Below the pieces are notes generated by a model. The model ran no database searches. It saw only the letters and a program-made list of their open reading frames with translations, and was not told where the DNA came from. DNA of 64,000 nucleotides, taken from Mytilus edulis (lineage: Eukaryota). The position numbers and the translations under genes were made by a program. Shown here piece by piece: positions 8,031 to 54,223 of this stretch; the stretch's first letter is position 1; every line of letters begins with the position of its first letter. The stretch is from assembly GCF_963676685.1 (NCBI RefSeq), contig NC_092350.1, forward strand, positions 77,190,001 to 77,254,000. Reading direction: 5' to 3'.

Positions 8031-8186
8031 CTACCATGTTGAAAATAATGGTGGTCTTGGCATAGGTGGCAAGAAGTCTACATTGTGTTGAGACGCGAGT
8101 TGTTGAAGTCCATTGTTGAACTTGTTATGTGGAGTCATGAAAGGATTCGGTGGTGTTGAAGTTCTTTCATTCTGTTCATCTTCCTG
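8031..8186 (-). CDS. Last coding exon 16b (QEDEQNERTSTPPNPFMTPHNKFNNGLQQLASQHNVDFLPPMPRPPLFSTW*)
   Basis: Acceptor tttaatttcag|CAG (NAGNAG), open in phase 0 for 51 codons to TAG. Followed by a long repeat-free AT-rich tract. Confidence 0.8.
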   Translation of the reverse strand, partial: QEDEQNERTSTPPNPFMTPHNKFNNGLQQLASQHNVDFLPPMPRPPLFSTW

Positions 8187-11100: not shown

Positions 11101-14100
11101 ATACAAGATTTAATAAACTCAAACAATAAATAATTAAAACAACAGAATTATAATGTATAAGATCCACACATTATTTGAAAAATAAACATCTATATAAACC
11201 TCTATTCCAACACCAGAGTTATCTAGCAAACACAAAATACTAATAATAAACATTATTCTGTGAAACTAAGGAGCAAAGTATTATTTGTGTATTTATTGAA
11301 TGCTTGCTGATCAAATAATTATCAAATTGAGAAAAGACCAAAATATTCCTAAATCATCCAAAAACACAATAATTCATGCTCAGTAATTCTACCTGAACTT
11401 CTCAAAAATATTTTCATAATTTTAAAGAAAGATCTCCATTTAGTCACATGAAATTCTATGAGTTATCCCCCTTTGAATAGGTATCTAAAACTGACCAACA
11501 CCGATTGGAATAAAGGATTACATACAACCAAACAGTGAAAACCTTTACATTTAATCAGTGTTCTGGTGTGGTAAGGAGATAATTCAGGAAGCTAGATTTC
11601 TGAAATATCCAAAATAAAAATAATACGTTATATTTAGAAGTTTTTCACATTTTGCTTTCTTATTTTGTTGTTGTTGATAAATGAATGACTTTAAAATCAC
11701 GGAGTCTTTCAAAAAAGAATATTTGACAAAGTCACGTTCTTGTGCATGTGCCAAGTCAGGGTTTTTATTGTTTTCTGATTACTGATAATCAACAAAAAGT
11801 TGTATCTGAGTCTTTTCTTACTGTCACATCTTCATAAGACCTAAAAATTCATACTTAACAATATCCTCTCAAGGTACATTGAACAATATAACCATTATAT
11901 GTTTCTTAAACAAAAATTAATAACACTCAAACACTATTAAAAATCACTTCAAAATGACTAAATTGCTAGAATTTTCATTTCCATCAACATGTCTATATCT
12001 AGTGAATATAATTATCCAAAATTTGTGCAGTATGCAACTTTTCATATGTGCTACAGTCACCTATATAAATTATGTGCTGGGATTAATAGATATAAGATGA
12101 GACTATCTGACATCTTATTGAATTTCTGGTAGGTGTAGAACAAAGGATGTTTGGAAGGATTTTTTTTAATCTTACAAAAAAAACCCACATAACATGAGAA
12201 TGTATTGTGATGAATATAAGGTAAAGTTGTAGAAGTTGATCAGTTTGAGCTGAGCAATACTCATTTCAAATCAATAAAGATCTTGGCACTGGTCTTGACA
12301 AGTGAGCAACAAAATTAGATGTGCATATAACAATAAGGAATGTGGTATTATTGCCAATGAGTCAGCTATCAACCAGTCTAAATGAAGTGGATGTAAACTA
12401 TGATTTTTCACTTTCCTGGGAGCCAATGTTTATGGTTGTCTAGAAAAGTTACATTATAGGAAATTTGATGTTTTTATGTTTCATATTTCAGGGTGCCTAT
12501 TAATGAAATTTGCAAGTGATTAATGTATTATGAAAATAGAAATGACACAAAATAAATTTGTTATCAATCCACAAACAAACAGACACACACACATACAGTA
12601 GAAAATAATAATGTGCATCTTGAAGATAAGTGATTAAGAAAGGTTACAACAAATCAACCTTTTATGATTTTGAAGTTGATACAGATTATAAGTAGAAGTT
12701 TGTTGAGGGAACCTAATACATCCATATCCAGAGAAAATTCAGTTACATTATCCAGATATATTGTTAATTGATAGCAGGGGACGAAAATTAGTGCTGATCC
12801 AGGGGTCTGAATCCAGTAGAATTTGCTTTAGACCAATGAGATTTGTCAGCTACAGTAGTTGTCCGATGAATGATAATATTAGAAAATAACTATATATTTT
12901 GGTGGAGAATTCCAGAACTCTCAATTTGTTTCTTGGTACTTGCTCATGAACAATCAGAACAGTACAAAACTATCTACAGGAATAAAGGAAAGAAAAGCAC
13001 CCGAGGAATCAAAGGCAGGGAAAATTATTCAAACTTAAAGGACCAGTAGATTTGGAGCAAGACCAGTAGACTTTTCAGTCCACTGGTCCGGCTGGCCAGG
13101 TCACAAAAAGCTTAAATTGGACCCCTGATTGATAGATATTGAATTTAAACAAGGGAAACCAACACCTGCAATGATAATCGTGCAGTTGGGTAATAGTGGG
13201 TGGATACCAAAAGGTATTCACAGTTGTCTTTCATTAGATAAGTAAAATAAAATAATAATAAAATTCAGGACTTCTCATTTTAGCTTGTTGGCGAAACATT
13301 TTGACCAGAATGAACTTTTACTGTGCAGAAATTGATGGGTGTTGTTGTCTTTATTATTGTTTTATTGATAGATATCGTTAAAAGCATTTAATTTCTATGC
13401 AAAATTTTGTATTCTTTTATTTTGATTTAAAAAAAAATGTTTTTAATAGAAGGGTTTCACATGTATCACTAAGGACTGTTTTATGCTATACAACAACAGC
13501 AAGAAGTGTACATGTTATCTTATTTTGAACATAAAATTTGTTCCAACTAAATTTGTCAAGAATCAGCCTTAAAATTTTCTTTTTAAAGCTTAAAAATGTA
13601 CAAATAATGTCTGACATGCAAAACAATTCTTCTCAGGTTAAATGAAGTGTTTTTTTATGCAGGAGGAATTATTTATATATTGAATTTTTTCTTAACTGCT
13701 AGATATATTAAATTAATTTGTTGAAATCTTTTCATGATAAAGAATAAGTGGAAACCAGGCAGTGCAAAAGAATGAAATGTCCATGCAATAGTTCACTGAT
13801 CATCAAATAATATAGTCAGTTATAAATAGAAAGATAGAAAAGGGAATACATTATGCTTAATCTACTTAAAAAGTTTTTAATCTCCTCTGTTATCAGATAT
13901 TTGAAGAAAAATATTCCAATAGTTATGAGAATTTTTTTTTACATCAGATAGTTTAATACTGAGTTTTTGTAAAAATCAAAATTGATGTTTTCAATCTTCT
14001 TGTTTCAAAATATTAATGAAATTGAATCTAGCATTTATGACGATTATGAAAAAAGTATTTGCATTCAAAATCTGGAATAGACTTATCATGCTTAGTATTT

Positions 14101-17100
14101 GTCTTTTAGAATTTCTAAAGAGCACTATAGTCTACTGAAGCACTGAATTAATTTTCATGCTGAAATTACCTCCCTTTAAAACAAAATCTAATTATACAAG
14201 CCATTGCAAATAAATTTACAGATAAAAACAAAATCCAAATGTTGTGTTTCATGTTAGTTTAACATGTTAAATATTGTTTTAATTTTCAGGTTACTATGAT
14301 CATCTTGTAAATGTTTAAGCAGCATGCAAGACTTACACTTTTATTTGTAATAGTACCATTCCCTCGTATATTATGTGTAGGACTATATTTTCTAAGTGAA
14401 GCACTTCCCATTCTTTGTGCTGAAGCACCTGCATAGGGTGCACCTGAAATAAAATAAGAAATATGATAACAGTTTTTTTTAAAAATTTTATTCACCAAAG
14501 CCATTTGTTAATACATTTGTATTTTAAAACTTACAAATTTAAATGAATACTTATATAAGGCTTTCTTACAAGGTAACTTTTAAAAATGACATACTATGCT
14601 TTCTCAAAGGGTAATATAAATAACATACTATGCTGACTCACAAGGTAATTTAAATGACATTCTATGCTGGCTTAGAAGGTAATTTAAATTACATACTATG
14701 CTGGCTCACAAGGTAACGTAAATGACTTACTATGTTGGCTTGCAAGGTAACTTAAATGACATACTATTCTGGCTTGAAACTTAAAAGACATACTTTGCTG
14801 GCTTGCAAGGTAACTTAAATGACATATTATGCTGGTTTGCAAGGTAACTTAAATAACATACTATGCTGGCTTGCAAGGTAACTTAAATGACATACTTTGC
14901 TGGCTTGCAAGGTAACTTAAATGACATACTATGCTGGCTTGCAAGGTAACTTAACTAACATACTATGCTGGCTTGCAAGGTAACTTAAATAACATACTAT
15001 GCTGGTTTGCAAGGTAATTTAAATGATATACTATGCTGGCTTACAAGGTAACTTAAATGACATACTATGCTGGCTCACAAGGTAATTTTAATGACACACT
15101 ATGCTGGTTTGCAAGGTAACTTAAATGACAAACAGATCCTGCATGTCTAACCCCGTCTCAATCTGTATGTATGTGACAGTCCCAATTCAGGAAATTGTAA
15201 TTCAGTGGTTGTTGTTTGTTGATGTGTAACATACTTGTTTATCAACATAAATGAGGCAGTTAGTTTTCTTGTTTGAATTGCTTTACATTAGTCATTTCTT
15301 AGTCTTTTTATAACTGGCTATGTGGTATGGGCTATGCTCATTGTTGAAGGCCATACAGTGACCTATATCTGTTAGTTTCTGTGTCATTAATGGTCTATTG
15401 TGAAAAGGTTGTCCTATTGGCAATGATACCACCTCTTTTTTTTATATCTGCTTGCTTAAAAGATTTTTTTTTTAGTTTTGAAGTTTGTGACCTAAACTGC
15501 TAAACATAGCTGTTTATTACCGGGAATAGGGTCAGGTCTAGTTGTTTGTGACCTAGACTGTCTGTTAACACACTTGTACATTACCTGGAATAGGATCAGG
15601 TCTAGTTGTTTGTGACCTAGACTGTCTGTTAACACAGCTGTACATTACCTGGAATTGGGTCAGGTCTAGTTGTTTGTGACCTAGACTGTCTATTAACACA
15701 GCTGTACATTACCTGGAATTGGGTCAGGTCTAGTTGTTTGTGAGCTAGACTGTCTGTTAACACAGCTGTACATTACCTGGAATAGGGTCAGGTCTAGTTG
15801 TTTGTGACCTAGACTGTCTGTTAACACAGCTGTACATTACCTGGAATAGGGTCAGGTCTAGTTGTTTTTGACCTAGACTGCCTGTTAACACAGCTGTACA
15901 TTACATGGAATAGGGTCAGGTCTAGTTGTTTGTGACCTAGACTGTCTGTTAACACAGCTGTACATTACCTGGAATAGGGTCATGTCTAGTTGTTTGTGAG
16001 CTAGACTGCCTGTTAACACAGCTGTACATTACCTGGAATAGGGTCAGGTCTAGTTGTTTGTGACCTAGACTGCCTGTTAACACAGCTGTACATTACCTGG
16101 AATAGGGTCAGGTCTAGTTGTTTGTGACCTAGACTGTCTGTTCACACTGCTATTGTCATTTCCATATGTAAGGGGACGTGGTTGACTTGTGTGAGGATGG
16201 ACCTCCTTTATAGGATTACCTCCATGTGGATGTTTTTGTGGTGACAGGGTTGGTGGTTGCTGTTTCTGCCTATAAAATACAGTAAAAAATTTGCAAGTCA
16301 AGGCTTCACAAAAGGAAATTCAAATAAAACTTTAAGAACTGAGATAAAACGATTCACACTCAGGTGACCTTTGTACCGAGTTTGAATGTACACAAAATCC
16401 GATCTTTGTATCAAGTATGACTGTATACAAAATCAGATGACCTTTGTACTAAGTTTGAATGTACACAAAATCAGATGACCTTTGTATCAAGTATGACTGT
16501 ATACAAAATCAGATGACCTTTGTACCAAGTTTGACTACACAATATCAGATAACTTTTGTTCCAATTTTGACTGTACACAAAATCAGGTGACCTTTGTACC
16601 AAGTTTGACTGTACACAAAATCAGATGACCTTTGTATAAAGTTTGACTACACAATATCAGATAACTTTTGTACCAATTTTGACTGTACACAAAATCAGGT
16701 GACCTTTGTACCAAGTTTGACTGTACACAAAATCAGATGACCTTTGTATAAAGTTTGAATGTAAACAATATCAGATGACCTTTGTATCAAGTTTGACTGT
16801 ACACAAAATCAGATGACCTTTGTATGAAATTTGACTGTACACAAACTCAGGTGACCTTTGTACCAAGTTTGAATGTACAAAAAATCAATTGACATTTGTA
16901 CCAAGTTTACCTGTACACAAAATCAGGTGACCTTTGTACCAAGTTTGACTGTACACAAAATCAGATGACCTTTGTATAAAGTTTTACTGTACACAAACTC
17001 AGGTGACCTTTGTACCAGTTTGAATGTACAAAAAAAACAATTGACCTTTGTACCAAGTTTACCTGTACACAAAATCAGATGACCTTTGTATAAAGTTTGA

Positions 17101-20100
17101 CTACACAAACTCAGGTGACCTTTGTTCCAAGTTTGACTGTACACAAAATCAGATGACCTTTGTATAAAGTTTGACTACACAATATCAGATGACCTTTGTA
17201 TAAAGTTTGAATGTAAACAATATCAGATGACCTTTGTATCAAGTTTGACTGTACACAAAATCAGATGACCTTTGTATGAAATTTGACTGTACACAAACTC
17301 AGGTGACCTTTGTACCAAGTTTGAATGTACAAAAAATCAATTGACATTTGTACCAAGTTTACCTGTACACAAAATCAGGTGACCTTTGTACCAAGTTTGA
17401 CTGTACACAAAATCAGATGACCTTTGTATAAAGTTTTACCGTACACAAACTCAGGTGACCTTTGTACCAGTTTGAATGTACAAAAAAACAATTGACCTTT
17501 GTACCAAGTTTACCTGTACACAAAATCAGATGACCTTTGTATAAAGTTTGACTACACAAACTCAGGTGACCTTTGTTCCAAGTTTGACTGTACACAAAAT
17601 CAGATGACCTCTGTACCAAGTTTGACTGTACACAAAATCAGGTGACCTTTGTACCAAGTTTGACTGTACACAAAATCAGGTGACCTTTGTATCAAGATTA
17701 ATCTTACAAAAAAATCAGGTGACCTTTGTATCAAGATTAATCGTACAAAAAAATCAGGTGACCTTTGTATCAAGATTAATCGTACAAAAAAATCAGGTGA
17801 CCTTTGTATCAAGTTTCACTGTAAACAAAATCAGGTGACCGTTGTATAAAGTTTGACTGTCATGAAAAGAGGTATGTCTTTTATTGTCATATTCTACATA
17901 AATGCCATACAGATAATAATGCCTACACCAGTATTCCAAAGTTCAATGGTTGAGCCCACAATTATTTATACATCATTTAATTTTTGGATATAGCACATTT
18001 TCTGATTGGTTGAAATTTTTTTTTGTCAATCAGTTCCTACACATAATTTGTCATGTGACCGTGCGGTCATCAACTTTTTTCATGATTTACTCCTTCAAAA
18101 TGGATTTTATTTCTGTTCATTCGAAATAACCTCAAATATGTAATGAGGGTTATTTAGTGTGCACCACATTGTTTTTGTTTGTTTTTCATTGACAGAAAAA
18201 ATATTAGTCATTCCTTAAATAACTAAATTGAAAACCCAAAGAAATATTTTGTAATTTTATACCTCCTTAGATAAACTGCCTCTGGTTTTTGTTCATTGAT
18301 GTTAACTGTCATTTCTGTCAAACCTTCATCATCAATTTGGTTAACTTGATCAAATTCATCATTTATATCTACAAAATATTTGTGTACCTTAGTCTTAAAT
18401 TTATCAACATTATAGAAACCTATCTTCCACCTAGCATTATAAGTTAAACTTAAAATCTGTTTTGATTATTATAACTGTAAATATTCACAGAAGTTATCAA
18501 ATCTGTTTAAACACTAACCTCAATCTACTCTTACTTCTCTTAATGTAAATTTTAATGCATACAAATAAGATGATGTCTTTTTTTAAATTCAATTTAATAG
18601 CGTAGTTTGGTTGATTTCTCTCATTGCAATTATCTCCCTTTGATTATACTTACCAAGAATTTGATCTGCTTCTGATGGAGCTTTAGAATCTTCAAATGCA
18701 TTCTTAGTAAACCTGTGTGCTGCAGTAGTCCATGCTATAGCCTGTGTAAAAAGCAAATATTATAATCTTAGATTACATTCATTTATTAAAATAAGACGAC
18801 AGACAAACACAGCAATCAACATTTACCATTGAGTAACCGACCGTGTCAGGACAGAATAGCCAGTCAAGGTCGTTAAAAACTTCAATCATCATTTACCATT
18901 GACTAACCAACTGTGTCAGGACTGTATAGCCAGTCAAGGTCATTAAAAACTTCAATCAACATTTACCATTGACTAACCAACCGTGTCAGGACTGTAAAGC
19001 CAGTCAAGGTCATTAATAACTTCCATCATCATTTACCATTGACTAACCGACCGTGTCAGGACTGTATAGCCAGTCAAGGTCGTTAAAAATTAAAAAGATT
19101 ATCTGTATCAGCTCTTTGCTTGAAATTTTCTGGCAAGATGTCATTCTCTATGTATATCATATTATCTTAATTCTTCTATTGCATAATTCCTTTTACAATA
19201 CACCAAACAAGTACATAAAATACTGTAATTAAGATTCCATATAAAACAAAGAACTGTCACAGTATACTGTTGATTTAAATCAGCCAAAACAGACTGTAAT
19301 TGTGTTTAGTTTTATTCACATAACAGACTGTAATTGTGTTTAGTTGTATTCACATAACAGACTGTAATAGTGTTTAATTGTATTCACATAATAGACTGTA
19401 ATTGTGTGTAATTGTATTCACATAATAGACTGTAATTGTGTTTAGTTGTATTCACATAATAGACTGTAATTGTGTTTAATTGTATTCACATAACAGACTG
19501 TAATTGTGTGTAATTGTATTCACATAATAGACTGTAATTGTGTTTAGTTGTATTCACATAATAGACTGTAATTGTGTTTAATTGTATTCACATAACAGAC
19601 TGTAATTGTGTTTAGTTGTATTCACATAACACACTGATATAGAACTGGCACCAACTTCATTTGAAAATTCTTTTGTGTTGCTTAAAAAACATCTCGTGTC
19701 ATTGCTAATATTTAAATATATTCAAGCAAGCAAAAGTTAAGGGCCTTTAATTTAGCTTTATAGAAGTAAAACCAAATAAAAATACATTAACATTACATAC
19801 ATAACAATGCTTAAAATCTGAACTAACTACTGACCTGTCCATTAGGTTTACATAAGATTGTTGTACATTCTGGTCCTGTCCCCCATTTCTCTTGCTCTTT
19901 CCAAACATAATCTGTCGGGGGCTGATGCAGCATTGGGTCATTATTTCCCGACCACACTGTGATTGTGTTGTTTCCAGTGAATTTCGTCCTAGGAGGGAAT
20001 CGGTAAACTGCAACAGGATGACCTCCAACATTCTGTTGTATCATGTACCCTCCAAACTCTACTTCCTTTAAGATAAATAAAAAAAAAACACTGTTAATAA

Positions 20101-32100: not shown

Positions 32101-33166
32101 CAGTTCATGCGTAAATGCACGGACACGACTGGAAACTCCATTTTTCAATCTTTCAAGAACCATAACTCCTGAACGGTAAAAGTCAAAATCGCCATTATTG
32201 GACTTGATCTCCATTTTGTCATCAGTAACAACATATTAAAATTTGGAAAGCTTAGGTAGAACAGTTCATGCGTAAATGCAGGGACACGACTGGAAACTCC
32301 ATTTTTCAATCTTTCAAGAACCATAACTCCTGAACGGTAAAAGTCAAAATCGCCATTATTGAACTTGACCTTCATTTAGTTGTCAGTAACAACATATTAA
32401 AATTTTAAAAGCTTTGGTTGAACGGTTCATGAGTTAATGCACGGACAACATTTGATTCCCGCCCGCCCGCCCGACCGCCCGCCCGACCGACCGCCCGCCC
32501 GACCGCCCGCCCGCCGTACATCCCCAAATCAATAACCGACATTTTTGTCACAAAAATCCGGTTAAAAATCTAAGTACATGTTTAGATTCAGCATATCAAA
32601 AAAGCCCAAGAATTCAATTTTTGTTAAAATCAAAGTTTAAATTTAGACCCTTTGAACTTTAATGTAGACCAATTTGAAAACAGGACCAAAAATTAGGAGA
32701 TAACTGTATTGTATTTTAAGCTCCGACGGCATCAATTGGGGATTTGATGGTCGCAAATTAAGTTTACTGGCGACGCGTTGATTTGGACCAACTTGAAAAC
32801 TGGGCCAATAATTAAAAATCTAAGTACATTTTTAGATTCAGCATATTAAAGAACCCCAAGGATTCAAATTTTGTTATAATCAAACTAAGTTTAATTTTGG
32901 ACCCTTTGGACCTTAATATGTAGACCAATTTGAAAACGGGACCAAAAATTAAGAATCTACATACAAAGTTAGATTCAGCATATCAAAGAACCCCAATTAT
33001 TCAATTTTTGATGAAATCCAACAAAGTTCAATTTTGGCCCCTTATTCCTAAACTGTTGGGACCAAAACTCCTAAAATCAAACCCGACCTTCCTTTTATGG
33101 TAAGGCCAAAAAAAATATATGTCTGTTTCCTGCTGCCAAGGCAAAAAAATCAGGGTCGGTAGGTCA

Positions 33167-33197
<31 letters not shown>

Positions 33198-45100: not shown

Positions 45101-48100
45101 ACAATTTGGTTTAATAAAACAAATTACAATTTGGTAAAAATTTTGAATGAGTTGCAATACTAACAGTCAAGTCACTGTAATAAGAAAATACACAATAAGT
45201 TTTAAAACAGTAAGGTTTTTGCCTGGTGCATCATCATACAACTTCAACATGTTGTAATTTAAATAAGAGTTTATAAAATAATATTTTTACACATTCTTGT
45301 GCTTGATACATAAACCATACAAATACAGTTTGCATACCTTCTTTTAAAACTTTCGTTTTCTCTTGTTAAATTATCTAAATCTCTCTGCATGCGTGGTACA
45401 TCATCTATTGATCGGGGTGCTGTTCTCACATGCATTAATTCCTGTTCCAAATTATTTATTTTTTGTTGGCAGTTATTTATTTGGTCTACAAGTTTTCTGT
45501 TTCTATCTGTTTCTACTAATAATCTGAAAATAAAGGAAAAAGCTAATTACTATCAGTTTGTAGAAATTGAAAAAAACATCAATGTTTATTTCAAGGATTT
45601 AGTTTCATAAAATACAATACGTCCATTAGATGGGATGAAATGTATTGTTAAATTTTGACAAATAAATAACTGAGATTTAAGAAACAACATGTTAATTTTT
45701 AAAAAGGAAAAAATTATCAGAGAAAGTATAAATTGGCTACAAATTAAAGGGGCACTGGCTACGAGATATATAAAAAATCTAATATATCATGTTTTTTGCT
45801 CAATCATTAATGAAATGCAAATAGTGAAATACTAATTCGCTTTTAGAAGCCAGTATGGTTCAATTTTGCCAAAATAAGCAAAAAAACATTGATTATGAAT
45901 TATTCACTTGCAAGTGAATAATTCGACCTCATTGAATCTGTACTCATGTGAACTTCAATTTAACCCCTAAGCTTCAGATGAATCACACATGAATTGTATG
46001 TGTAAAGTTATTTAAAGGAAAAGAATGTCAACATTGAAAGTGAAACAAAGGTAAATTATTTGATTGACTGATTCCATCCAGAAAAAAATCATTCTTATAC
46101 ATAAAAAAACGATGATAAGCATTTATTTTTCATCTTTAATATGAAATTAAATAGACCCAGAAAAATCCAACAGCAAGAGTTTGCTTAATCTATTTATATC
46201 TCACTAAGACTATATTTATGTTTTCGTCGCTTATATGGTCATTGGATGACTTAAGAGGTCAAATTGATAGTTAATTAGATGACGTCTAGACTAAAATACA
46301 CACGAAACGAAGCTACGTTTAAACGTTGTTTTTTTTTAAATCCCCTCTCTTGATTTTCTACCGATATTTACCTATCTTCCAGATCTTGGGCAGATTGTTG
46401 ATGTTTACCACAGTGCTGTTGTAAAATAATCTTTTCTTTTGAAACATCTTCCAACTGGTATCTGAATAGGATTCAATGAAAACAATACTTGTCTAACTAA
46501 CATTCACCTCTTTGGCTTATATAATGATCTAGGGTTGGTAATCCATTTGAAATGAAAATCATCAAATAATAATCTGATATTTTATCATACTTTCTCTATG
46601 GTGTTGATAGATCTTTGGTAGACCTTTTTTCATTCACAACTTGTAAATAGATTTACAGGCTGATTTAAAGATTGGCATATAGTATAGAAAGTTTGTTGAA
46701 GACACTGAGTGAATCATAACCTTTATGTGTTTTTGTGTTGTTAGGTTGATGTTGATTGACACACATGCCCTGTTGTTTAATCAATTTAAAGTCTTTGACT
46801 TTGCTGCTAGCTCGTTCATTCTTTTGGACTTAGTCAAGATGTCAAGATGAAGAAAATCAGTTAAGACATGTACTTGTTTTCCAAGTCTGTTATAAAACAA
46901 TAGAGATATAGATTCTAGAAGCTGTCATTTTATTAATTATCAACCGCAGGTCCTTTTTTGGACATTTTTGTCAGATTTATGTGTATGTTTGTTGACATGT
47001 TCAAGTCTGTTGTGTTTGTATGTCTGTGATGTACATTGTATGTTTACACAGCTGCTAGGTCCCAATAATTGTCACATTTACCAATAACTTTTGTTTAGGT
47101 TGCTCATTCATTATAATAGAATTATGAACAACTAGCATACAAGTGGCAGGTTGAGCTAGCTGTTTTAATTCACCTGTTCTTTAGAAAATGCCTGTACAAA
47201 GTCAAGAACATGACAGTTGTTTTCTGTTGGTTGACATAATCTAGTTGATTTTTTTTTTGTGGACTTCCCCTTTTCGAATTAACATTGGAATTCAGTATTT
47301 TAGTTAATTCTATTTTATCTGACCTTGTTACTAATTACCTCATTTCCAGTCTGATCACCGAGTTTATCAATTTTAAAACATATGGAAATGAGATTGCTTC
47401 AAGATGCAATGTGAGAAATTACTTACCTCAAACTTTCTAGTTCCCTTTCATATAAATTCTTAAGATGGGATACTTCTTCTTCTAGAATTCTAGCAGACTT
47501 CAGAAACGAAGATGAATCTAATTGTCCACTTTGTTGCCCAAGTTGCCTAACTTTTGAAATATACTGAGTAAATCTGTCATTCAATCTTTGTAGCTCTTCC
47601 TTTTCCTGAGCTCTTGACAAAGATGTTGAAGACAGCGTGTACATATCTCCTCCGTAATTGAAATTACTCATGGTCTTAGTCCTAGAACCAGTTTTATCCA
47701 ATTTGCGTATACTATTTGCACTGTATGCCCGTGGCTGGGGTATGTTGTTTCTTGCTGAAACCAAATGTGAGAACTTCTTTTCAAAAGGAGTCAATGACTT
47801 TTTGGTGCCAGAAAATGCACTTGTGCGATAGCGATTATTTATATTTTGATTAGGATTGCCACTAGTTTTGACAAAATAGGTATTTTGGTTATAAGCACCT
47901 CTAGGACCAGGGAATTGATCCTTTAGATAATGAGTTGATGTGACAAATGATTTTCCAACAAGTTTAGTTTGATTTTCAATTGGTGGTGGCGATGGTGTTG
48001 TTCTTAAACTATTAACATGTTTATATTCTGATTCACTTCCAACTAAGGATCTCTCAGAGTCAGATAATTCTTTATCAGCTGTCAGTACTTGGTCCTCCTT

Positions 48101-49870
48101 ATTTGTATCTTCTTTATCAAATCCTGGTAAGTTAAGCTGTATATCGTGCAGTGAACTATCAGGTGTTGAATGTAAAACTAGTCGTTCAATCTCTGGATCC
48201 CCGTCACCCAAATGTGCAGTGTTTATATTGTGTGCATCAAAACCTTCCTGGTAACTATCACTAAACCTGAAAGTAGAAAAATTGATTATATTACTCATTA
48301 TTTTTTTAATGATTATCACATCAAACAAAGTATGGGCTTTGCTCATTGTTGAAGGTCGTAAGGTGACCTATAGTTATTAATTACGGTGTCATTTTGGTCT
48401 CTTGTGGAGAGTATGTCTCATTGGCAATCATACCACATCTTCTTTTTTATATTGTGAAGACAGAATATTGTTGGTTTTTTTATTCTAATGTTGCAGTATA
48501 TATAAATGTGCATTGCTGGCAGTCAATTATGTCAGCCAAGTATGAAAAATAAATGTATTCAAAGTCTGTTTTGCTTTCATTCAATTTTATCTACACTTTC
48601 CCAGATAAATATGATTTGTTTAACATCTTTCACATATCATGCCATATAAAAGTCACAGTAAATCTTAACCAATTTGATTTTGATGTTAACAGAAGCTGAA
48701 AATGACTGTTTGACAACTAACAGTTAAGGGCATTACTACCCTCCTACAACTTTTTTAATTTTGAACTATTGGCAAACAAGAAGTGGCTTCATGGAAGATG
48801 GAAAAATTGCTTACACACTTCAATTCAACATTATGAAGCTACAGACCAAATATAAAACAATTCCCTTTCATAGAAGTAAAAAACAAATTGAAACAATTAA
48901 GTTTTCTACCTCAGACAGACTGACTGAGTTGATTGGTTAGTCAACATGCTTTCTCCGTTAGCAACACAGTAAAAACAAAGAGACAACCAACAGTCGACAC
49001 AACAAGCCATAAAAAATCTAAGATTGAGCAAACAAGACTCATTAAAAATTTGTTATGACATCAATTAAATACACTGAAATCCAATTTACAATGGTTAAAA
49101 TTAAAATCAACCAGTAATGGGTGTTTACAGCTTTGCATAAAAACAAGTACGACATGTATGACTACTTTCACCATGAATTAATGTGCTTGGATATGTAAAA
49201 CATTCTGTATTGTATGTGACTTCACAAAGACCACATTACCATTCAATTTCCCTGTCAGTGGAAAAAAAACCCAGATTTCAAGTATCCACACAAACAGAGT
49301 GAAAACCACATACAAAGCATTAAGTATTGTTTGTGTTAATATGTAACAAGCAACAATCATATATATAAAACAACTAGGACTTTTCTATATTTACCTTCCC
49401 GTCATATGAACATCTACATTTCATCTATAGAGATTAAAAATTAATTGATTAAAACATTGCATAACTCCTTTAAATTGCAAACCAGGTGCTCCGCAGCGCA
49501 GCTTTATACGACCGCAGAGGTCGAACCCTGAACAGTTGGGGCAAGTATGGACAAAACATTCAAGCGTGATACAGCTCTGAATTTGGATTGTGATCAAATT
49601 TTTGACATTACATGGGTTTTTTTTACACAAAACAAATGTCAAGATTTCACAAATCAATTAAAGATTTCTTCTTCAAACTTTTTAAATCTAAAATTAAATA
49701 GTTGACACAGCATAGGTTTCTGACACAGAATGAATGTGGTCTAATGAACTTAAAAAGGTTTTTTTTGCCTTTGAGCAATTCACTATGCTGTTGAATATTA
49801 ATCCTCTCAAAAAAATGTTTGAAGAAATTTTCTTTTTATTTATGAAATCTGAAATGAGAAAAATTTAACC

Positions 49871-49907
<37 letters not shown>

Positions 49908-52900: not shown

Positions 52901-54223
52901 GAACTCAAAACTCAAAACAGGTATTCAAATGAGTTTAATAAGATTATTTAAGCACATGCATACTTATTCAAACAAAGTAGCAGTATTTAAAAAACTTGTT
53001 ACAATATAAAAGGAGCATTAAGTCCTCTTGCACTTAAAATCCCCCATGAAGAATTTGAAAAATTGGCAGATTATGGAGTTGATGAAGATCGTAGATTATT
53101 TCTGTTAGTTTTTTACACAGTTTGTACACACTCAGCTCGTTTTAGATTTAAATAAAAATACACAGATGTCTATTGTTGAATACTGCATGAAACATTTTAG
53201 GTGTTTTTTGTTGTTTGGTTGATTGCTCTAGATGTTTACCCAATATTTTCTTTTACATTTTGAATGCACTTAAACTGTAGAGGTACTATTTTAAACCATA
53301 ATTTTAAGAATGATAAACTTCTTGCTATTTTGCAAGAAATAAATGGTAGTGCTGACTCTTATTACTTAAAAAACAATTAAGTTCAGAAATATTAACTACT
53401 GGTACTCAGCCAGGCCCTAAGCATATATTCACTTAAGCTTATAATCTGTTATGAAATTTTAGTTGTAGTTATCATATAAAATTTAATGACTGTTGAGATC
53501 CTTTTGAAGCACACATTCATTAAGTTTATGGACATATGCATATGAAAAAGGAAACTACTTAAAATAAGTGGATACATATCAACACTAGCTGTTTGAAGCT
53601 TAAGTATGTTAAAGTGCTATGAAGAGATTGTGACTTTTTATATTCAATTTTTGGTCTTTTTCAAAAGATTCTTTATTTAGAATCAAATTTTGGACTTCCA
53701 AGTACAGCATTTTCCATAATTCAAAATAGTCTTTCCCTGTAGTAAGTTTATAACATGTCAAATTGGCTAACTAAAATTCAAATATGACACCCTTCTTTTG
53801 TTTAAAAATTAACATAGCAATGTTCTAAGCTCAATAAAACAGGGGTGCAATGTGCCAGGCATCACAAATAAAATTTCTACATCAGTTAAATTTGAATGAC
53901 CACTAAGATAAAAATGATCGTTTTATTTGCTCACTAGGAAATTAAAAAAAAAAACACTCCATACTTAGTAAGTCTAAATGTATTTGTCCACTGTTAGTGG
54001 TGACACAGTTGGTTGTCTAGAGCATTTTCAGAATTTTAATAAAAGTTAATTCGATTTTGGGGCTATTTAATTACACTCATAAACTTTAACATTAAAGATC
54101 AAATACATATATATTTTCATTGTAAAGTATATCAATCTTTATATGAAAATAAATGTCAATAGAACTTAATTAAAATTCTTACCTGACAGATTTTTTTGAG
54201 GGAGAGTTTTTTTTCTCCAACAT
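8031..54223 (-). CDS. LMNTD1-like: Whole spliced gene span: LMNTD1-like intermediate-filament protein (head + lamin-type rod + low-complexity linker + lamin tail domain + extension), ~1108 aa with last exon 8031-8186 or ~1093 aa with last exon 10703-10813
   Basis: Shared exon lengths 41+840+90+186+280+126+221+440+166+76+231+88+106+173+107 = 3171 nt (1057 codons), open throughout with matching phases. Rod start EKEELQRLNDRF, rod end AEIEALKALLQEEERRL. The tail QQNVGGHPVAVYRFPP...HQPPTDYVWKEQ...CTTILCKPNGQAIAW resembles vertebrate LMNTD1/IFLTD1 as I recall it. Confidence 0.85.
10703..10813 (-). CDS. Alternative last coding exon 16a (AGSIRIGQPSPFHSPLQQEFAQAYDNRLTSLVRFSS*)
   Basis: GC-richer island with acceptor ctatttttag at 10814, open in phase 0 to TAA at 10703. 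Possible weak donor TAG|GTGTGT at 10697. Confidence 0.6.
   Translation of the reverse strand, partial: AGSIRIGQPSPFHSPLQQEFAQAYDNRLTSLVRFSS
12775..13127. mobile_element. hAT-type MITE (CAGGGG…CCCCTG termini, 8-bp TSD ATTGATAG)
   Basis: ATTGATAG at 12767-12774 and 13128-13135. Confidence 0.8.
14337..14443 (-). CDS. Coding exon 15 (GAPYAGASAQRMGSASLRKYSPTHNIRGNGTITNKS)
   Basis: 107 nt, phase 1/0, acceptor tttatttcag, donor AGT|GTAAGT. Confidence 0.85.
14569..15130. repeat. 34-bp minisatellite (caaggtaacttaaatgacatactatgctggcttg), ~16 copies
   Basis: Direct periodicity, e.g. caagg at 14806 and 14840. Confidence 0.95.
15136..15447 (+). repeat. Dispersed repeat family ending …gctcattgttgaaggcc…ttggcaatcataccacatcttcttttttatat; related copies 8545-8755(+), 48329-48451(+), 61741-62127(-)
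   Basis: Mutual similarity of the four copies within the window. Class not determined. Confidence 0.7.
15484..16146. repeat. 64-bp minisatellite, 10 copies plus a partial, made of the exon 14 3' end and its splice donor
   Basis: Donor-equivalent position recurs every 64 nt from 15519 to 16095. Confidence 0.95.
16097..16269 (-). CDS. Coding exon 14 (QKQQPPTLSPQKHPHGG…RQSRSQTTRPDPIP)
   Basis: 173 nt, phase 2/1, acceptor ttttatag, donor CCAG|GTAATG. Its 3' end is the first unit of the 64-bp array. Confidence 0.85.
16358..17862. repeat. 38-bp minisatellite (tcagatgacctttgtaccaagtttgactgtacacaaaa), ~40 copies, with a 452-bp higher-order duplication
   Basis: Period 38 (16433, 16471). The rare variant tcaattgacatttg recurs at 16885 and 17337. 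Confidence 0.95.
18263..18368 (-). CDS. Coding exon 13 (DINDEFDQVNQIDDEGLTEMTVNINEQKPEAVYLR-R), acidic
   Basis: 106 nt, phase 1/2, acceptor ttttgtag, donor AG|GTATAA. Confidence 0.85.
18654..18741 (-). CDS. Coding exon 12 (AIAWTTAAHRFTKNAFEDSKAPSEADQIL)
   Basis: 88 nt, phase 0/1, acceptor tttacacag, donor G|GTAAGT. Confidence 0.88.
18815..19090. repeat. 70-bp tandem repeat, 4 copies
   Basis: atttaccatt at 18821, 18891, 18961 and 19031. Confidence 0.95.
19287..19635. repeat. 34-bp minisatellite (acagactgtaattgtgtttagttgtattcacata), ~10 copies
   Basis: Direct periodicity. Confidence 0.95.
19835..20065 (-). CDS. Coding exon 11, lamin tail domain core (EVEFGGYMIQQNVGGHPVAVYRFPP…CTTILCKPNGQ)
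   Basis: 231 nt, phase 0/0, acceptor tatcttaaag, donor CAG|GTCAGT. Contains the YRFP, TVW and W..G lamin-tail motifs. Confidence 0.95.
21820..21895 (-). CDS. Coding exon 10, start of lamin tail domain (AVGDVKILDVNQEGKYVRLVNEGGK)
   Basis: 76 nt, phase 2/0, acceptor tcttgctag, donor AAG|GTAAGA. Matches the lamin-tail G.V.I..V...GK(F/Y)VRL.N pattern. Confidence 0.92.
24150..28600. repeat. Large homogeneous 65-bp minisatellite (68-bp variant units), ~68 copies
   Basis: caggagggg at 24181, 24246 and 24311 onward. Only a few recurring variants. Confidence 0.97.
28625..28745. repeat. 30-bp tandem repeat, 4 copies
   Basis: tttaatgaccttgactacccaacataacca periodicity. Confidence 0.9.
31443..32568 (-). 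mobile_element. HINE family D nested in family A; ~161-bp tandem repeats x5-6 and (CCGC/CCGA)n
   Basis: Hairpin gctgtc-acaac-gacagc, subTIR aaccggattt / aaatccggtt. Host ataatc|aaaaatc is restored on removal. Confidence 0.85.
33104..33514. mobile_element. PIF/Harbinger-type MITE, ~29-bp TIR (GGCCAAAAAAAATATATGTCTGTTTCCTG), TAA TSD, nested in family A
   Basis: TAA at 33101-33103 and 33515-33517, near-perfect TIRs. Confidence 0.85.
35473..35638 (-). CDS. Coding exon 9 (SGRSGQSLGQGKDYFDEMFRDL…HDYTTATS-S)
   Basis: 166 nt, phase 1/2, acceptor attacag, donor AG|GTAAGA. Confidence 0.88.
36125..36564 (-). CDS. Coding exon 8, Pro/Gln/Thr/Tyr/Ser-rich linker (LTAPVDVSS…VVRVKSAP)
   Basis: 440 nt, phase 2/1, acceptor gacctgtag, donor CCGA|GTAAGT, inside ORF 36006-36674. 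Confidence 0.88.
36743..37312. mobile_element. MITE with TTAA TSD and GG termini (Kolobok/T2-like), TIR GGTGG.TCGGG.CTATTCGA
   Basis: TTAA at 36739-36742 and 37313-37316, ~20-bp TIR with 2 mismatches. Confidence 0.8.
37762..37982 (-). CDS. Coding exon 7 (IRMIDHQRQSLEE…LKAEIEALKALLQEEER-R), end of rod
   Basis: 221 nt, phase 0/2, acceptor tctttgaag, donor AG|GTATTT, ORF 37752-37988. Confidence 0.93.
38581..40816 (-). mobile_element. Full-length HINE family A copy
   Basis: subTIR tatacgaccgca at both ends, terminal hairpin, (GAC)n, several internal tandem modules. Confidence 0.88.
41225..41350 (-). CDS. Coding exon 6 (ISALKVQMENDASTIERLDKEKSQVLGSIGDLKARITNLEGE), coil 2
   Basis: 126 nt, phase 0/0, acceptor ccaacag, donor GAG|GTAAGA. 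Confidence 0.92.
41607..41710 (+). repeat. Short dispersed repeat fragment; related inverted copy ~23240-23395
   Basis: aaattgagaatggaaatg.ggaatgtgtcaaag…ggtcttcaa shared between the two loci. Confidence 0.6.
42950..43035 (+). repeat. Repeat carrying a decayed minimal type I hammerhead ribozyme (42979-43022)
   Basis: gcgtca CTGATGA gtct tatgt agat GAAt gcgc GTC tgg. The CUGAUGA box, stem II and GUC triplet are present, but GAAA is mutated. Confidence 0.65.
43247..43526 (-). CDS. Coding exon 5 (WEKEQLLRQELEEKL…ESEQQYTKN), end of coil 1B / linker / coil 2 start
   Basis: 280 nt, phase 2/0, acceptor tacttttcag, donor AAT|GTAAGG, overlaps ORF 43229-43444. Confidence 0.92.
43660..43790. repeat. 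30-bp tandem repeat, ~4 copies
   Basis: ccagtaaata at 43667, 43697, 43727 and 43757. Confidence 0.85.
43861..44037. mobile_element. Old Tc1/mariner-type MITE, TA TSD
   Basis: ta|cagtgtaacctgcctaatc … gattagacaagtaaccctg|ta imperfect TIR. Confidence 0.6.
44091..45180. repeat. ~1.1-kb diverged foldback palindrome (centre ~44730) with a ~150-bp GC-rich insertion at ~44326-44474 in the left arm
   Basis: ttacagtgactt … aagtcactgtaa outer ends, ttccatggggagat … atctccccatggaa inner ends. The arms align throughout. Confidence 0.85.
45338..45523 (-). CDS. Coding exon 4 (LLVETDRNRKLVDQINNCQQKINNLEQEL…NLTRENESFKR-R), coil 1B
   Basis: 186 nt, phase 2/2, acceptor ttattttcag, donor AG|GTATGC. Confidence 0.9.
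45748..46320 (+). mobile_element. Probable one-ended DNA transposon remnant starting TTAA|AGGGGCACT
   Basis: Kolobok-like terminus. No matching right TIR found. Confidence 0.4.
46372..46461 (-). CDS. Coding exon 3 (YQLEDVSKEKIILQQHCGKHQQSAQDLED-R), coil 1B
   Basis: 90 nt, phase 2/2, acceptor cctattcag, donor AG|GTAAAT, heptad pattern continues. Confidence 0.88.
47427..48266 (-). CDS. Coding exon 2: long head domain plus coil 1A/start of 1B (…LSRAQEKEELQRLNDRFTQYISKVRQL…LYERELESLR)
   Basis: Within ORF 47423-48346. Acceptor ttttctactttcag at 48267, donor AG|GTAAGT at 47426, IF helix-initiation motif present. Confidence 0.95.
49480..51353 (-). mobile_element. Full-length HINE family A copy with a ~36-nt poly-C tract and internal deletions
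   Basis: Same termini as 38581-40816. (GAC)n at 51269-51295. Confidence 0.88.
51370..52468 (-). mobile_element. Full-length HINE family B copy
   Basis: Terminal stem tgtcgagc…tgcaac aaaa gttgca…gctcgaca, (GCC)n at 52383-52412, ~150-bp internal repeats. Confidence 0.88.
54183..54223 (-). CDS. Coding exon 1 (MLEKKNSPSKKSV-R), not in the ORF track
   Basis: ATG at 54223 with A at -3 and an in-frame TAA 9 codons upstream. Ends AG|GTAAGA in phase 2, which matches the acceptor of exon 2 and gives KKSVRFSDSY. Confidence 0.7.

What the first reader, a model, noticed from the sequence alone, without database searches (positions are those of the whole stretch)
8031..54223. LMNTD1-type tail fused to a complete lamin-length IF rod: a candidate little-described intermediate-filament class
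Seen: a ~360-aa rod (EKEEL…EEERRL, long enough to include the 42-residue coil-1B extension of lamins and invertebrate IFs), a lamin-tail domain, no CaaX in either C-terminus, and no obvious basic NLS after the rod. From recall: the tail (QQNV.G…YRF.P, HQPP.D..WKEQ, C.TILCKPNGQAIAW) and the downstream block (L.R.K..PPT…HP…RQ.R..TRP) match vertebrate LMNTD1/IFLTD1 much better than lamins, and human LMNTD1 has no full rod. Inference: this is the ancestral, full-length, potentially filament-forming form of LMNTD1, a ~1100-aa non-farnesylated IF that is neither the nuclear lamin nor the usual molluscan cytoplasmic IF-A/B.
Basis: partly seen in the sequence, partly recalled or inferred. Interest (0 to 1): 0.8.

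Follow-up and report, generated by a model that had tools for sequence, protein, structure and literature searches.

The report
Mussel nematocilin/cilin gene (full-length LMNTD1)

Summary
A minus-strand gene runs from the ATG at 54223 to the stop ending at 8031. It has about 17 constitutive exons plus alternative exons, all with AG/GT borders. It encodes a protein of about 1110-1125 aa: a disordered head, a 363-aa lamin-length rod, a P/Q/Y-rich linker, a lamin-tail domain, a conserved post-LTD block and three alternative C-termini. None of the C-termini is a CaaX box, and no classical NLS is present.

The exons are 100% identical to Mytilus edulis RefSeq XP_071122116.1, which is named "lamin-B2.L-like". 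RNA-seq junction reads join tail exon E7 to LTD exon E8 (74 reads). Transcript contigs of 3.2 kb are long enough to carry rod and LTD together.

The LTD exon scores 90.6 bits against mammalian LMNTD1 but only 40-53 bits against human lamins. LMNTD1 finds only this locus in the genome. The protein is collinear end to end with the full-length lungfish LMNTD1.

This is the nematocilin family of Kollmar 2015 (rod + Ig + "nematocilin tail domain", rod lost in mammals), renamed Cilin by Kremnyov et al. 2025, who include an oyster member expressed in ciliated cells. Side observations: three tandem rod-only paralogues that arose in the mussel family, and a 9-aa alternative micro-exon inside coil 2.

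The parts
54183..54223 (-). E0: first coding exon, ATG at 54223 (MLEKKNSPSKKSV, then AG of an Arg codon)
   Evidence: Peptide located; tblastn of P0245 residues 1-14, 100%; donor AG|GTAAGA
47427..48266 (-). E1: disordered head plus coil 1A and the start of coil 1B (…AQEKEELQRLNDRFTQYISKVRQL…ELESL)
   Evidence: Pfam Filament positions 1-60, 41.1 bits against cut-off 40; splice sites; 100% identical to P0245
46372..46461 (-). E1b: 90-nt coil 1B exon (YQLEDVSKEKIILQQHCGKHQQSAQDLED)
   Evidence: tblastn of P0001, P0213 and P0245; AG/GT borders
45338..45523 (-). E2: coil 1B exon. It contains the conserved Pro-containing break (APRSIDDVP).
   Evidence: AlphaFold break at residues 359-364
43247..43526 (-). 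E3: end of coil 1B, linker L12 (SKTDSNIPD) and start of coil 2
42141..42167 (-). E3b: alternative 27-nt micro-exon (YQKSRLMRM) that inserts 9 aa into coil 2
   Evidence: Present in RefSeq isoforms P0241, P0243 and P0248; found in the window with ag|…|gt borders
41225..41350 (-). E4: coil 2 exon
37762..37982 (-). E5: end of coil 2 (…PLKAEIEALKALLQEEERR)
36125..36564 (-). E6: P/Q/S/Y-rich disordered tail 1, ending in the conserved YETTPSVNKLQIEPSPPVTPRPVGPVVRVKSAP
35473..35638 (-). E7: conserved pre-LTD motif SLGQGKDYFDEMFRDL (predicted helix)
   Evidence: In RNA run X24, 74 reads run from E8 into 35477-35506.
29695..29745 (-). E7b: alternative 51-nt exon (YPCRSKSIWIKKDWKF). It is skipped in run X24.
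   Evidence: the loose-end consensus at E8 has agreement 1 with E7
21820..21895 (-). E8: first LTD exon (AVGDVKILDVNQEGKYVRLVNEGGK)
   Evidence: RNA joint 20064→21819, 41 reads
19835..20065 (-). E9: LTD core exon (QQNVGGHPVAVYRFPP…HQPPTDYVWKEQ…CTTILCKPNGQ)
   Evidence: Pfam LTD; 90.6 bits to seal LMNTD1 against 40-52.6 bits to human lamins; single copy in the genome; RNA joints
18654..18741 (-). E10: last LTD exon (AIAWTTAAHRF…)
   Evidence: RNA joints 18740→19834 (45 reads) and 18368→18654 (99 reads)
18263..18368 (-). E11: acidic linker ending in the conserved …VYLRR
16097..16269 (-). E12: conserved post-LTD block (QKQQPPTLSPQKHPHG…NRQSRSQTTRPDPIPG), taken here to be Kollmar's nematocilin-tail domain
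   Evidence: E11→E12 junction, 58 reads; colinear weak hit of seal LMNTD1
15483..16151 (.). 64-bp minisatellite, 10.5 copies, that repeats the 3' end of E12 and its splice donor
14337..14443 (-). E13: APYAGASAQRMGSASLRKYSPTHNIRGNGTITNKS
11555..11599 (-). E14a: alternative terminal exon (KSSFLNYLLTTPEH*)
   Evidence: P0241, P0001
10703..10813 (-). E14b: AGSIRIGQPSPFHSPLQQEFAQAYDNRLTSL. It is either spliced at 10721, or read through to …VRFSS and a stop.
   Evidence: P0245, P0246; predicted C-terminal helix
8031..8186 (-). E15: terminal exon (…PPNPFMTPHNKF…PPMPRPPLFSTW*). The PPxxSW end is conserved as far as sharks.

Best explanation
The locus is the Mytilus edulis orthologue of nematocilin / 'cilin' / LMNTD1. 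This is the third, ancient branch of metazoan intermediate-filament proteins, beside lamins and canonical cytoplasmic IFs.

Shown here:
- One spliced minus-strand transcript encodes a disordered head of about 230 aa and a 363-aa lamin-length rod.
- After the rod come a disordered P/Q/Y-rich linker with a conserved helical DYFDEMF motif, an Ig-fold lamin-tail domain, a conserved but disordered post-LTD block, and alternative C-termini.
- The protein has no CaaX box and no classical NLS.

Inferred from family knowledge and the literature:
- The rod forms parallel coiled-coil dimers that assemble into cytoplasmic 10-nm-type filaments.
- Lacking an NLS and farnesylation, the protein stays out of the nuclear lamina.
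- As in Hydra cnidocils, ctenophore comb plates and oyster larval ciliated cells, it reinforces or anchors motile cilia (gill, velum) and sperm flagella.
- The LTD plus post-LTD module, the only part mammals kept, is the conserved partner-binding part.
- Alternative splicing (9 aa in coil 2, 17 aa before the LTD, three C-termini) tunes assembly or partners.
For: Gene model:
- Exon structure and phases.
- Exons are 100% identical to RefSeq XP_071122116.1.
- Pfam Filament covers the whole profile at 66 bits, and LTD scores 51.3 bits (M. trossulus isoform P0213).
- Lamin A 1-300 aligns without the 42-residue gap.
- Rod length is held at 358-367 aa in nearly all full-length models from coral to lungfish LMNTD1.

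LMNTD1 type:
- E9 scores 90.6 bits to seal LMNTD1 against 52.6, 42.7 and 40 bits to human lamin A, B1 and B2.
- None of the 150 best hits ends in a CaaX box, and many carry the post-LTD block or the PPxxSW end.
- Seal LMNTD1 hits only this locus in the 1.37-Gb genome, at E9 with 91 bits and colinearly at E12.
- Alignment with lungfish LMNTD1 is collinear end to end, E 6e-106.
- The LTD exons of the three canonical IF/lamin genes of the same genome score 20 bits or less against the family's LTD profile.

One transcript:
- RNA-seq depth sits on exons only, and three introns carry 41-99 junction reads.
- 74 reads join E7 to E8 and 58 reads join E11 to E12.
- Contigs of 3160 and 3211 nt have the E11-E8 exons at record positions 280-785. 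The 2375+ nt left upstream fit E0-E7 (2390 nt).
- cDNA-sized contigs (3.4-3.8 kb, ORFs of 1000-1063 aa) exist in a related mytilid and in oysters.

No NLS or CaaX.

Literature: PMC4448529 and bioRxiv 10.1101/2025.08.21.671432.
Against: - Filament formation, cytoplasmic location and association with cilia were not tested for this protein. They rest on other species.
- Run metadata were coded, so the tissue of expression is unknown.
- The AlphaFold model (mean pLDDT 52.5, monomer, 29-sequence alignment) shows conserved Pro-containing breaks inside coil 1B (residues 359-364) and 18 residues before the rod end (573-577). These are atypical for canonical IFs and could alter assembly.
- Mammals retain only the LTD plus post-LTD block, which shows that the conserved function need not require a filament.
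- I built no tree that includes lamins and canonical IFs. No such protein sequences came out of the tools, and joining the window's exons was excluded.
Confidence: 0.88

Rival explanations
1. It is a nuclear lamin, as its RefSeq name 'lamin-B2.L-like' suggests: a lamina protein with a lamin-length rod and an LTD.
For: The architecture is Filament + LTD with the long coil 1B. RefSeq and UniRef call many orthologues lamin-B2-like, lamin-L(II)-like or similar.
Against: - None of the three C-termini is a CaaX box, and no basic NLS follows the rod.
- The LTD is much closer to LMNTD1 than to lamins (90.6 against 40-52.6 bits).
- The reciprocal search from LMNTD1 hits only this locus.
- It carries the post-LTD block and the PPxxSW terminus shared with LMNTD1 and nematocilins.
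- The genome has three other, stronger Filament loci that can supply the true lamin.
Confidence: 0.03
2. It is an ordinary protostome cytoplasmic IF (the molluscan IF-A/B, 'non-neuronal IF' type) with unusually long head and tail extensions.
For: Protostome cytoplasmic IFs also have the long coil 1B and an LTD and lack CaaX and NLS. One short Patella isoform is named 'non-neuronal cytoplasmic intermediate filament protein'.
Against: - The three canonical IF/lamin loci in the same genome match the Pfam Filament profile more strongly (71-88 bits on coil 1A against 50 bits here). Their LTD exons score 20 bits or less against this family's LTD profile.
- Orthologues with the same head-to-tail layout exist in coral, hemichordate, amphioxus, shark and lungfish. 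The rod tree follows the species tree. Canonical protostome IFs are not expected in those lineages (Kollmar 2015).
Confidence: 0.03
3. Two separate genes, a rod gene and an LTD-only LMNTD1-like gene, were merged by gene prediction across the 13.6-kb intron.
For: The 13.6-kb intron is full of minisatellites. Mammals have LTD-only transcripts. Rod-only paralogues exist in Mytilus.
Against: - 74 RNA-seq reads run from E8 directly into the 3' end of E7, with consensus agreement 1. It maps to 35477-35506.
- No cluster of read starts lies upstream of E8 (table 6).
- Contigs of 3.2 kb extend 2.4 kb beyond E8.
- Intronless cDNA-sized contigs encode both domains in relatives.
Confidence: 0.01
4. The family is the same, but the mechanism differs. 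The protein is not a filament builder. It is a dimeric scaffold whose conserved LTD plus post-LTD module does the work at cilia or centrosomes, and the rod serves only to dimerise or space it.
For: - Mammals and fish lost the rod but kept the LTD and post-LTD block, and still express them in ciliated cells and spermatids.
- The LTD core is the best conserved part: 54% identity between mussel and seal, against about 29% over the full-length alignment with lungfish LMNTD1.
- Conserved prolines interrupt coil 1B and the end of coil 2.
Against: - Rod length is held at about 358-367 aa across phyla, with the IF consensus motifs at both ends. This is typical of assembly constraints.
- Hydra nematocilin and Mnemiopsis cilin are reported in filamentous structures (Hwang 2008, cited in PMC4448529).
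Confidence: 0.15

Closest known systems
Nematocilin / cytovec / 'Cilin' family (Hwang 2008; Kollmar 2015, PMC4448529; Kremnyov et al. 2025, bioRxiv 10.1101/2025.08.21.671432)
   Same: - Rod + Ig/LTD + conserved C-terminal tail block, with no NLS and no CaaX.
- Orthologues across Cnidaria and Bilateria.
- A bivalve member (oyster) has already been analysed and found enriched in ciliated cells.
- The rod tree of the family follows the species tree.
   Different: - The mussel protein has a much longer disordered head (about 230 aa) and linker, giving about 1110 aa against about 730-940 aa in coral, amphioxus, shark and lungfish.
- It shows extensive alternative splicing, including a 9-aa micro-exon within coil 2.
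- Mytilids have extra rod-only paralogues.
Vertebrate LMNTD1 (IFLTD1)
   Same: - The LTD core is 54% identical to seal LMNTD1, and the reciprocal search returns only this locus.
- The post-LTD block is shared (VFLKREK..PP…HP…RQ.R.Q..RPDP).
- Alignment with full-length lungfish LMNTD1 is collinear end to end, including the rod, the DYF..F.L motif and the IG.PSPF.SPLQ motif.
   Different: Mammalian LMNTD1 has no rod (387 aa in seal, LTD only). The mussel protein has the complete 363-aa rod, like the lungfish, salamander and frog proteins.
Nuclear lamins (A, B1, B2)
   Same: Lamin-length coil 1B, IF consensus ends of the rod, and an Ig-fold LTD.
   Different: No NLS and no CaaX. LTD similarity is only 40-53 bits. 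There is an extra post-LTD block, a long head and alternative C-termini.
Protostome canonical cytoplasmic IFs (molluscan non-neuronal IF type)
   Same: Long coil 1B plus an LTD, cytoplasmic, no CaaX.
   Different: They are separate loci in the same genome (C4:62.74 Mb, C2:46.40 Mb, C2:74.97 Mb). Their LTD is split differently and is very divergent from this one.

Membership tests
Intermediate filament protein (Pfam PF00038 Filament) | Full rod matching the profile above the gathering score, with coil 1A (LNDRF..YI.KVR.L) and coil 2 end (EIEALK.LL.EEE.RL) motifs | tested here: met
   Exon E1 alone scores 41.1 bits against cut-off 40. M. trossulus isoform P0213 covers profile positions 1-313 at 66 bits. 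Its exons are 96-100% identical to the window's.
Intermediate filament protein, lamin-type rod | Six extra heptads (42 residues) in coil 1B | tested here: met
   A 359-aa span covers a 313-position profile. Lamin A 23-291 aligns to residues 223-496 with no 42-residue gap, whereas vimentin aligns only up to residue 348.
Lamin tail domain (Pfam PF00932) | Ig-fold LTD above the gathering score | tested here: met
   51.3 bits against cut-off 34.3 on P0213. PDB lamin LTD chains match at E 1e-15 to 1e-20. AlphaFold predicts a beta sandwich at 815-922.
Nematocilin / cilin / LMNTD1 | Conserved region after the Ig domain (Kollmar's nematocilin-tail domain) | tested here: met
   Exon E12 matches many family members in phyla from molluscs to vertebrates at 13-99 bits. 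The alignment with seal LMNTD1 runs through this block, as does the one with lungfish LMNTD1. I could not compare with Kollmar's own Supplementary Fig. S6 alignment.
Nematocilin / cilin / LMNTD1 | LTD closer to LMNTD1 than to lamins, with a reciprocal best hit | tested here: met
   90.6 bits to seal LMNTD1 against 52.6, 42.7 and 40 bits to lamins A, B1 and B2. LMNTD1 searched against the genome hits only window E9 (91 bits) and E12.
Nematocilin / cilin / LMNTD1 | No NLS and no CaaX | tested here: met
   The motif scan is negative, and the three C-termini are LFSTW, VRFSS and TPEH. No dedicated NLS predictor was available.
Nematocilin / cilin / LMNTD1 | Monophyly with nematocilins to the exclusion of lamins and canonical cytoplasmic IFs in a rooted tree | not tested
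   My rod tree holds family members only. No lamin or canonical IF protein sequences were returned by the tools, and joining exons of the genome's other IF genes was excluded. Published trees (PMC4448529; Kremnyov 2025, Supp. Figs 1 and 9) show this for the family.
Nematocilin / cilin / LMNTD1 | Expression in ciliated cells or spermatids; association with cilia | not testable with these tools
   The gene is expressed and spliced in a Mytilus RNA-seq run, but the tissue is coded. The oyster data come from the literature.
Nuclear lamin | NLS between rod and LTD, and a C-terminal CaaX box | tested here: not met

The most novel reading that the evidence does not exclude
In the mussel family the cilin family has split into a division-of-labour system. 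One part is the full-length cilin of this window. The other is three tandem, diverged rod-only paralogues on another chromosome (G000:C3:77.16-77.24 Mb), which lost the LTD and post-LTD block and co-polymerise with it. This would be the mirror image of mammals, which kept only the LTD part. The 9-aa coil-2 micro-exon and the three C-termini would act as splice-controlled switches of assembly or partner choice.
Probability: 0.15. Interest if true: 0.45.

Novelty: already known. Interest (0 to 1): 0.22.

Why it matters
It matters mainly as a correction and a resource. The gene is named "lamin-B2.L-like" or "uncharacterized" in RefSeq across molluscs, but it is the nematocilin/cilin (LMNTD1) orthologue, not a lamin.

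Mussels have large, accessible ciliated gills and abundant sperm. A verified exon model, its isoforms and RNA evidence therefore give a practical system to test what full-length cilin does at cilia. The same system could show what the LTD/post-LTD module retained in human LMNTD1 binds. It does not open a new class.

Tried and rejected
- **Pfam on single exons.** Only E1 (Filament) and E9 (LTD) were recognised. The other rod exons gave only sub-threshold coiled-coil noise.
- **Pfam LTD against the whole genome.** The search gave nothing at E 0.001 or better because the domain is split over exons.
- **LTDs of the three canonical IF/lamin genes.** tblastn gave only a 20-bit hit. A family HMM found their LTD exons at 20 bits or less each. 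This is enough to show distance but not enough for a tree.
- **Rooted LTD/rod tree with lamins.** Not possible, because no lamin proteins came out of the tools. The word search with the rod returned only 31 family members.
- **My own crude heptad scan.** It was too noisy to place linkers or a stutter. I used AlphaFold secondary structure instead. That model is a low-confidence monomer, so the helix breaks are only indications.
- Whole-protein analyses used database proteins returned by the tools. P0245 is identical exon by exon to the window, and P0213 is near-identical.
- **Findings notebook by words.** Blank.
- **Literature on bivalve LMNTD1/IFLTD1.** Searches found nothing specific beyond the two family papers.

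Full report
**What is in the window**

The window is AT-rich (27-38% G+C). It belongs to a 1.37-Gb genome, on contig C7 at 77.19 Mb. On the minus strand, stop-free stretches with IF and LTD sequence motifs are spread from 54 kb down to 8 kb.

I defined the exons in two ways. One was splice-site inspection and phase bookkeeping. The other was tblastn of database orthologues. Both give one consistent model:

| Exon | Coordinates | Content |
|---|---|---|
| E0 | 54223-54183 | ATG, MLEKKNSPSKKSV |
| E1 | 48266-47427 | head and coil 1A |
| E1b | 46461-46372 | coil 1B |
| E2 | 45523-45338 | coil 1B |
| E3 | 43526-43247 | end of coil 1B, L12, start of coil 2 |
| E4 | 41350-41225 | coil 2 |
| E5 | 37982-37762 | rod end, EEERR\|L |
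| E6 | 36564-36125 | disordered tail 1 |
| E7 | 35638-35473 | pre-LTD motif |
| E8 | 21895-21820 | LTD |
| E9 | 20065-19835 | LTD core |
| E10 | 18741-18654 | LTD |
| E11 | 18368-18263 | acidic linker |
| E12 | 16269-16097 | post-LTD block |
| E13 | 14443-14337 | tail |

There are also alternative exons:
- E3b (42167-42141) adds 9 aa.
- E7b (29745-29695) adds 17 aa.
- E14a (11599-11555) ends …TPEH*.
- E14b (10813-10721) is either spliced on, or read through to …VRFSS*.
- E15 (8186-8031) ends …PPLFSTW*.

Every border is AG/GT and all phases fit.

**Identity of the gene**

The exons are 100% identical to Mytilus edulis RefSeq XP_071122116.1, "lamin-B2.L-like isoform X5" (P0245, 1110 aa). Values below 100% come from alignments running a few residues into introns. 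RefSeq also has models for three relatives:
- M. galloprovincialis, named "lamin-B2.L-like".
- M. trossulus, named "uncharacterized LOC134683324".
- M. californianus.

Whole-protein analyses were done on database proteins returned by the tools: P0245, and the near-identical M. trossulus isoform P0213.

**Checking the observation**

- **Filament domain.** Pfam Filament covers the whole 313-position profile over 359 residues of P0213 (66 bits, cut-off 40). The LTD scores 51.3 bits against a cut-off of 34.3.
- **Coil 1B length.** Lamin A 1-300 (6jlb) aligns residues 23-291 to residues 223-496 of P0245 without a 42-residue gap. Vimentin aligns only through the first part. Coil 1B is therefore lamin-length.
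- **Rod length.** The rod is 363 aa. This length is held at 358-367 aa in nearly all full-length models, from a coral to lungfish and amphibian LMNTD1.
- **No NLS.** P0245 has no K[KR]x[KR] motif, no bipartite pattern, no run of four basic residues and no 10-residue window with five K/R.
- **No CaaX.** None of the three C-termini is a CaaX box.

An AlphaFold model of P0245 used 29 aligned orthologues. Its mean pLDDT is 52.5, and it is high only in the rod and LTD. It predicts:
- a disordered head (1-231);
- helices at 232-259, 265-358, 365-443, 450-572 and 578-595;
- a disordered linker with one conserved helix at 754-769 (DYFDEMFRDL);
- a beta sandwich at 815-922;
- a disordered but conserved post-LTD region;
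- a C-terminal helix at 1089-1105.

The helix breaks at 359-364 and 573-577 fall on prolines that are conserved in the family consensus. Such breaks are unusual for canonical IF rods. They are indications only, because the model is a low-confidence monomer.

**Is it LMNTD1-type?**

I searched exon E9 (77 aa) against 1.84 billion representative proteins. It found full-length proteins of 1000-1160 aa in bivalves and gastropods. It also found orthologues in these groups (names):
- annelid, flatworm and hemichordate;
- amphioxus, coral, shark and sturgeon;
- lungfish, salamander and frog, where RefSeq names the protein "lamin tail domain-containing protein 1".

A nemertean orthologue came from the word search with the rod. 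The scallop orthologue is named "Intermediate filament tail domain-containing protein 1" in UniProt.

The evidence for LMNTD1 type is as follows:
- Seal LMNTD1 scores 90.6 bits (54% identity). The same exon scores 52.6, 42.7 and 40 bits against human lamin A, B1 and B2 LTDs.
- None of the 150 best hits ends in a CaaX box. Many carry the E12 block or the PPxxSW terminus.
- In the reverse direction, seal LMNTD1 hits only this locus in the genome: E9 at 91 bits, and colinearly E12.
- The alignment with full-length lungfish LMNTD1 is collinear from coil 1A to the IG.PSPF.SPLQ motif (E 6e-106).

The genome has three other loci with stronger Filament matches: C4:62.74 Mb, C2:46.40 Mb and C2:74.97 Mb. 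Their LTD exons score 20 bits or less against a profile of this family's LTD. The window gene is therefore neither the lamin nor a canonical cytoplasmic IF of the mussel.

**One transcript**

I laid one RNA-seq run (X24, raw reads) and three transcript-like contig sets on 17900-22900.
- Depth is confined to E8-E11, on one strand orientation.
- Three introns are spanned by 41, 45 and 99 reads. Their ends are CT..AC on the plus strand, which is GT..AG on the minus strand, exactly at the predicted borders.
- 74 reads that end at the E8 acceptor continue with a sequence that maps to 35477-35506, the 3' end of E7. The tail exon is therefore spliced straight to the first LTD exon, skipping E7b.
- 58 reads join E11 to E12 (16239-16268).
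- No cluster of read starts lies upstream of E8.

Two contigs of 3160 and 3211 nt hold the E11-E8 exons at record positions 280-785. The 279 nt before them equal E12+E13 (280 nt) to within one base. The 2375 or more nt after them fit E0-E7 (2390 nt). I did not see the sequence of those remaining parts.

cDNA-sized contigs (3.4-4.7 kb) encode 1000-1063-aa proteins with both domains in a related mytilid and in oysters.

**Comparison with what is known**

Kollmar 2015 (PMC4448529) defined nematocilins as rod + Ig domain + a conserved C-terminal "nematocilin-tail-domain". [quoted passage not shown]

Kremnyov et al. 2025 (bioRxiv 10.1101/2025.08.21.671432) did the following:
- identified Kollmar's human nematocilin as LMNTD1;
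- showed full-length LMNTD1 in turtles and frogs;
- localised the ctenophore protein to cilia and sperm flagella;
- found the oyster and sea-urchin members enriched in ciliated larval cells;
- proposed the name Cilin for the whole family.

The remaining discrepancy is one of naming, since RefSeq calls it lamin-like.

**Mechanism**

Shown here are the architecture, the lack of lamin targeting signals, orthology to LMNTD1, and expression as one spliced mRNA.

Inferred is the function. Parallel coiled-coil dimers would assemble into cytoplasmic filaments that are associated with motile cilia and flagella. The LTD plus post-LTD module would be the conserved interaction part.

A rival mechanism is a dimeric scaffold rather than a filament. 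It keeps some weight because of the rodless mammalian forms and the proline breaks.

**Side observations**

- A 64-bp minisatellite repeats the E12 donor about ten times.
- Three diverged, tandem, rod-only paralogues lie on C3:77.16-77.24 Mb. They are 48% identical in the rod, 584 aa long, and have no LTD. In the rod tree they are sister to the mytilid cilins (support 100/99), which indicates a mussel-family duplication.
- A 27-nt micro-exon inserts 9 aa into coil 2.

**Verdict**

Interest is low to moderate.

Noticed in passing
G000:C3:77162248-77167261, 77172968-77180251 and 77238152-77243175 (outside the window): Three tandem, mutually diverged paralogues of this gene's rod. One is P0218/P0263, 584 aa, named 'lamin-A-like' or 'non-neuronal cytoplasmic IF-like'. 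It is 48% identical to the window's rod, has the same rod length, and has no LTD or post-LTD block. In the rod tree they are sister to the mytilid cilins (100/99) on a long branch, which indicates a mussel-family duplication that lost the tail domains.
   Followed up: partly
window 42141-42167 (-): An alternative 27-nt micro-exon (YQKSRLMRM) with ag/gt borders. RefSeq isoforms that use it insert 9 residues, which is not a multiple of 7, into coil 2 between …QQYTKN and ISALKV….
   Followed up: partly
window 15483-16151: A 64-bp minisatellite of 10.5 copies at 94% identity. Each copy repeats the last 19 codons of exon E12 and its GT donor. Because 64 is not a multiple of 3, use of most of the other donor copies would shift the frame. 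Which donor is used was not tested.
   Followed up: partly
window 24155-28600, 16360-17860, 14584-15130 and 19288-19636: Large intronic minisatellites: 65 bp x 68 copies, 38 bp x 40, 34 bp x 16 and 34 bp x 10. The 4.4-kb array lies in the 13.6-kb intron between tail exon E7 and LTD exon E8.
   Followed up: no
window 18735-19235: An intronic 70-bp repeat block receives RNA reads on both strands and very high summed contig depth (1400-2100 in X1), with many loose ends. It behaves like a dispersed repeat transcribed elsewhere, not like part of this mRNA. A minor joint 18740→19214 (4 reads) may be a cryptic exon in it.
   Followed up: no
window 34194-34448, 62861-63070 and 63360-63572 (-): Three copies of a conserved open frame (…NQ(T/P)RWPPWLKI(E/K)HRGK(M/I)QFLA…KAFRANLTW…), one inside an intron of this gene. 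Probably a dispersed mobile-element fragment.
   Followed up: no
window 38.5-40.9 kb, 49.2-51.4 kb and 30.8-34.1 kb: Near-identical composite repeat blocks with internal 135- and 161-bp tandem units. They lie in two introns of the gene and between exons E0 and E1.
   Followed up: no
P0010 (Mizuhopecten isoform X3), residues before the LTD: One scallop isoform carries an extra insert with a basic stretch (…RGKKTQKGKLKRKL…) just before the LTD, at the position of the mussel's alternative exon E7b. It might be an isoform-specific NLS-like segment. No equivalent was seen in the mussel.
   Followed up: no
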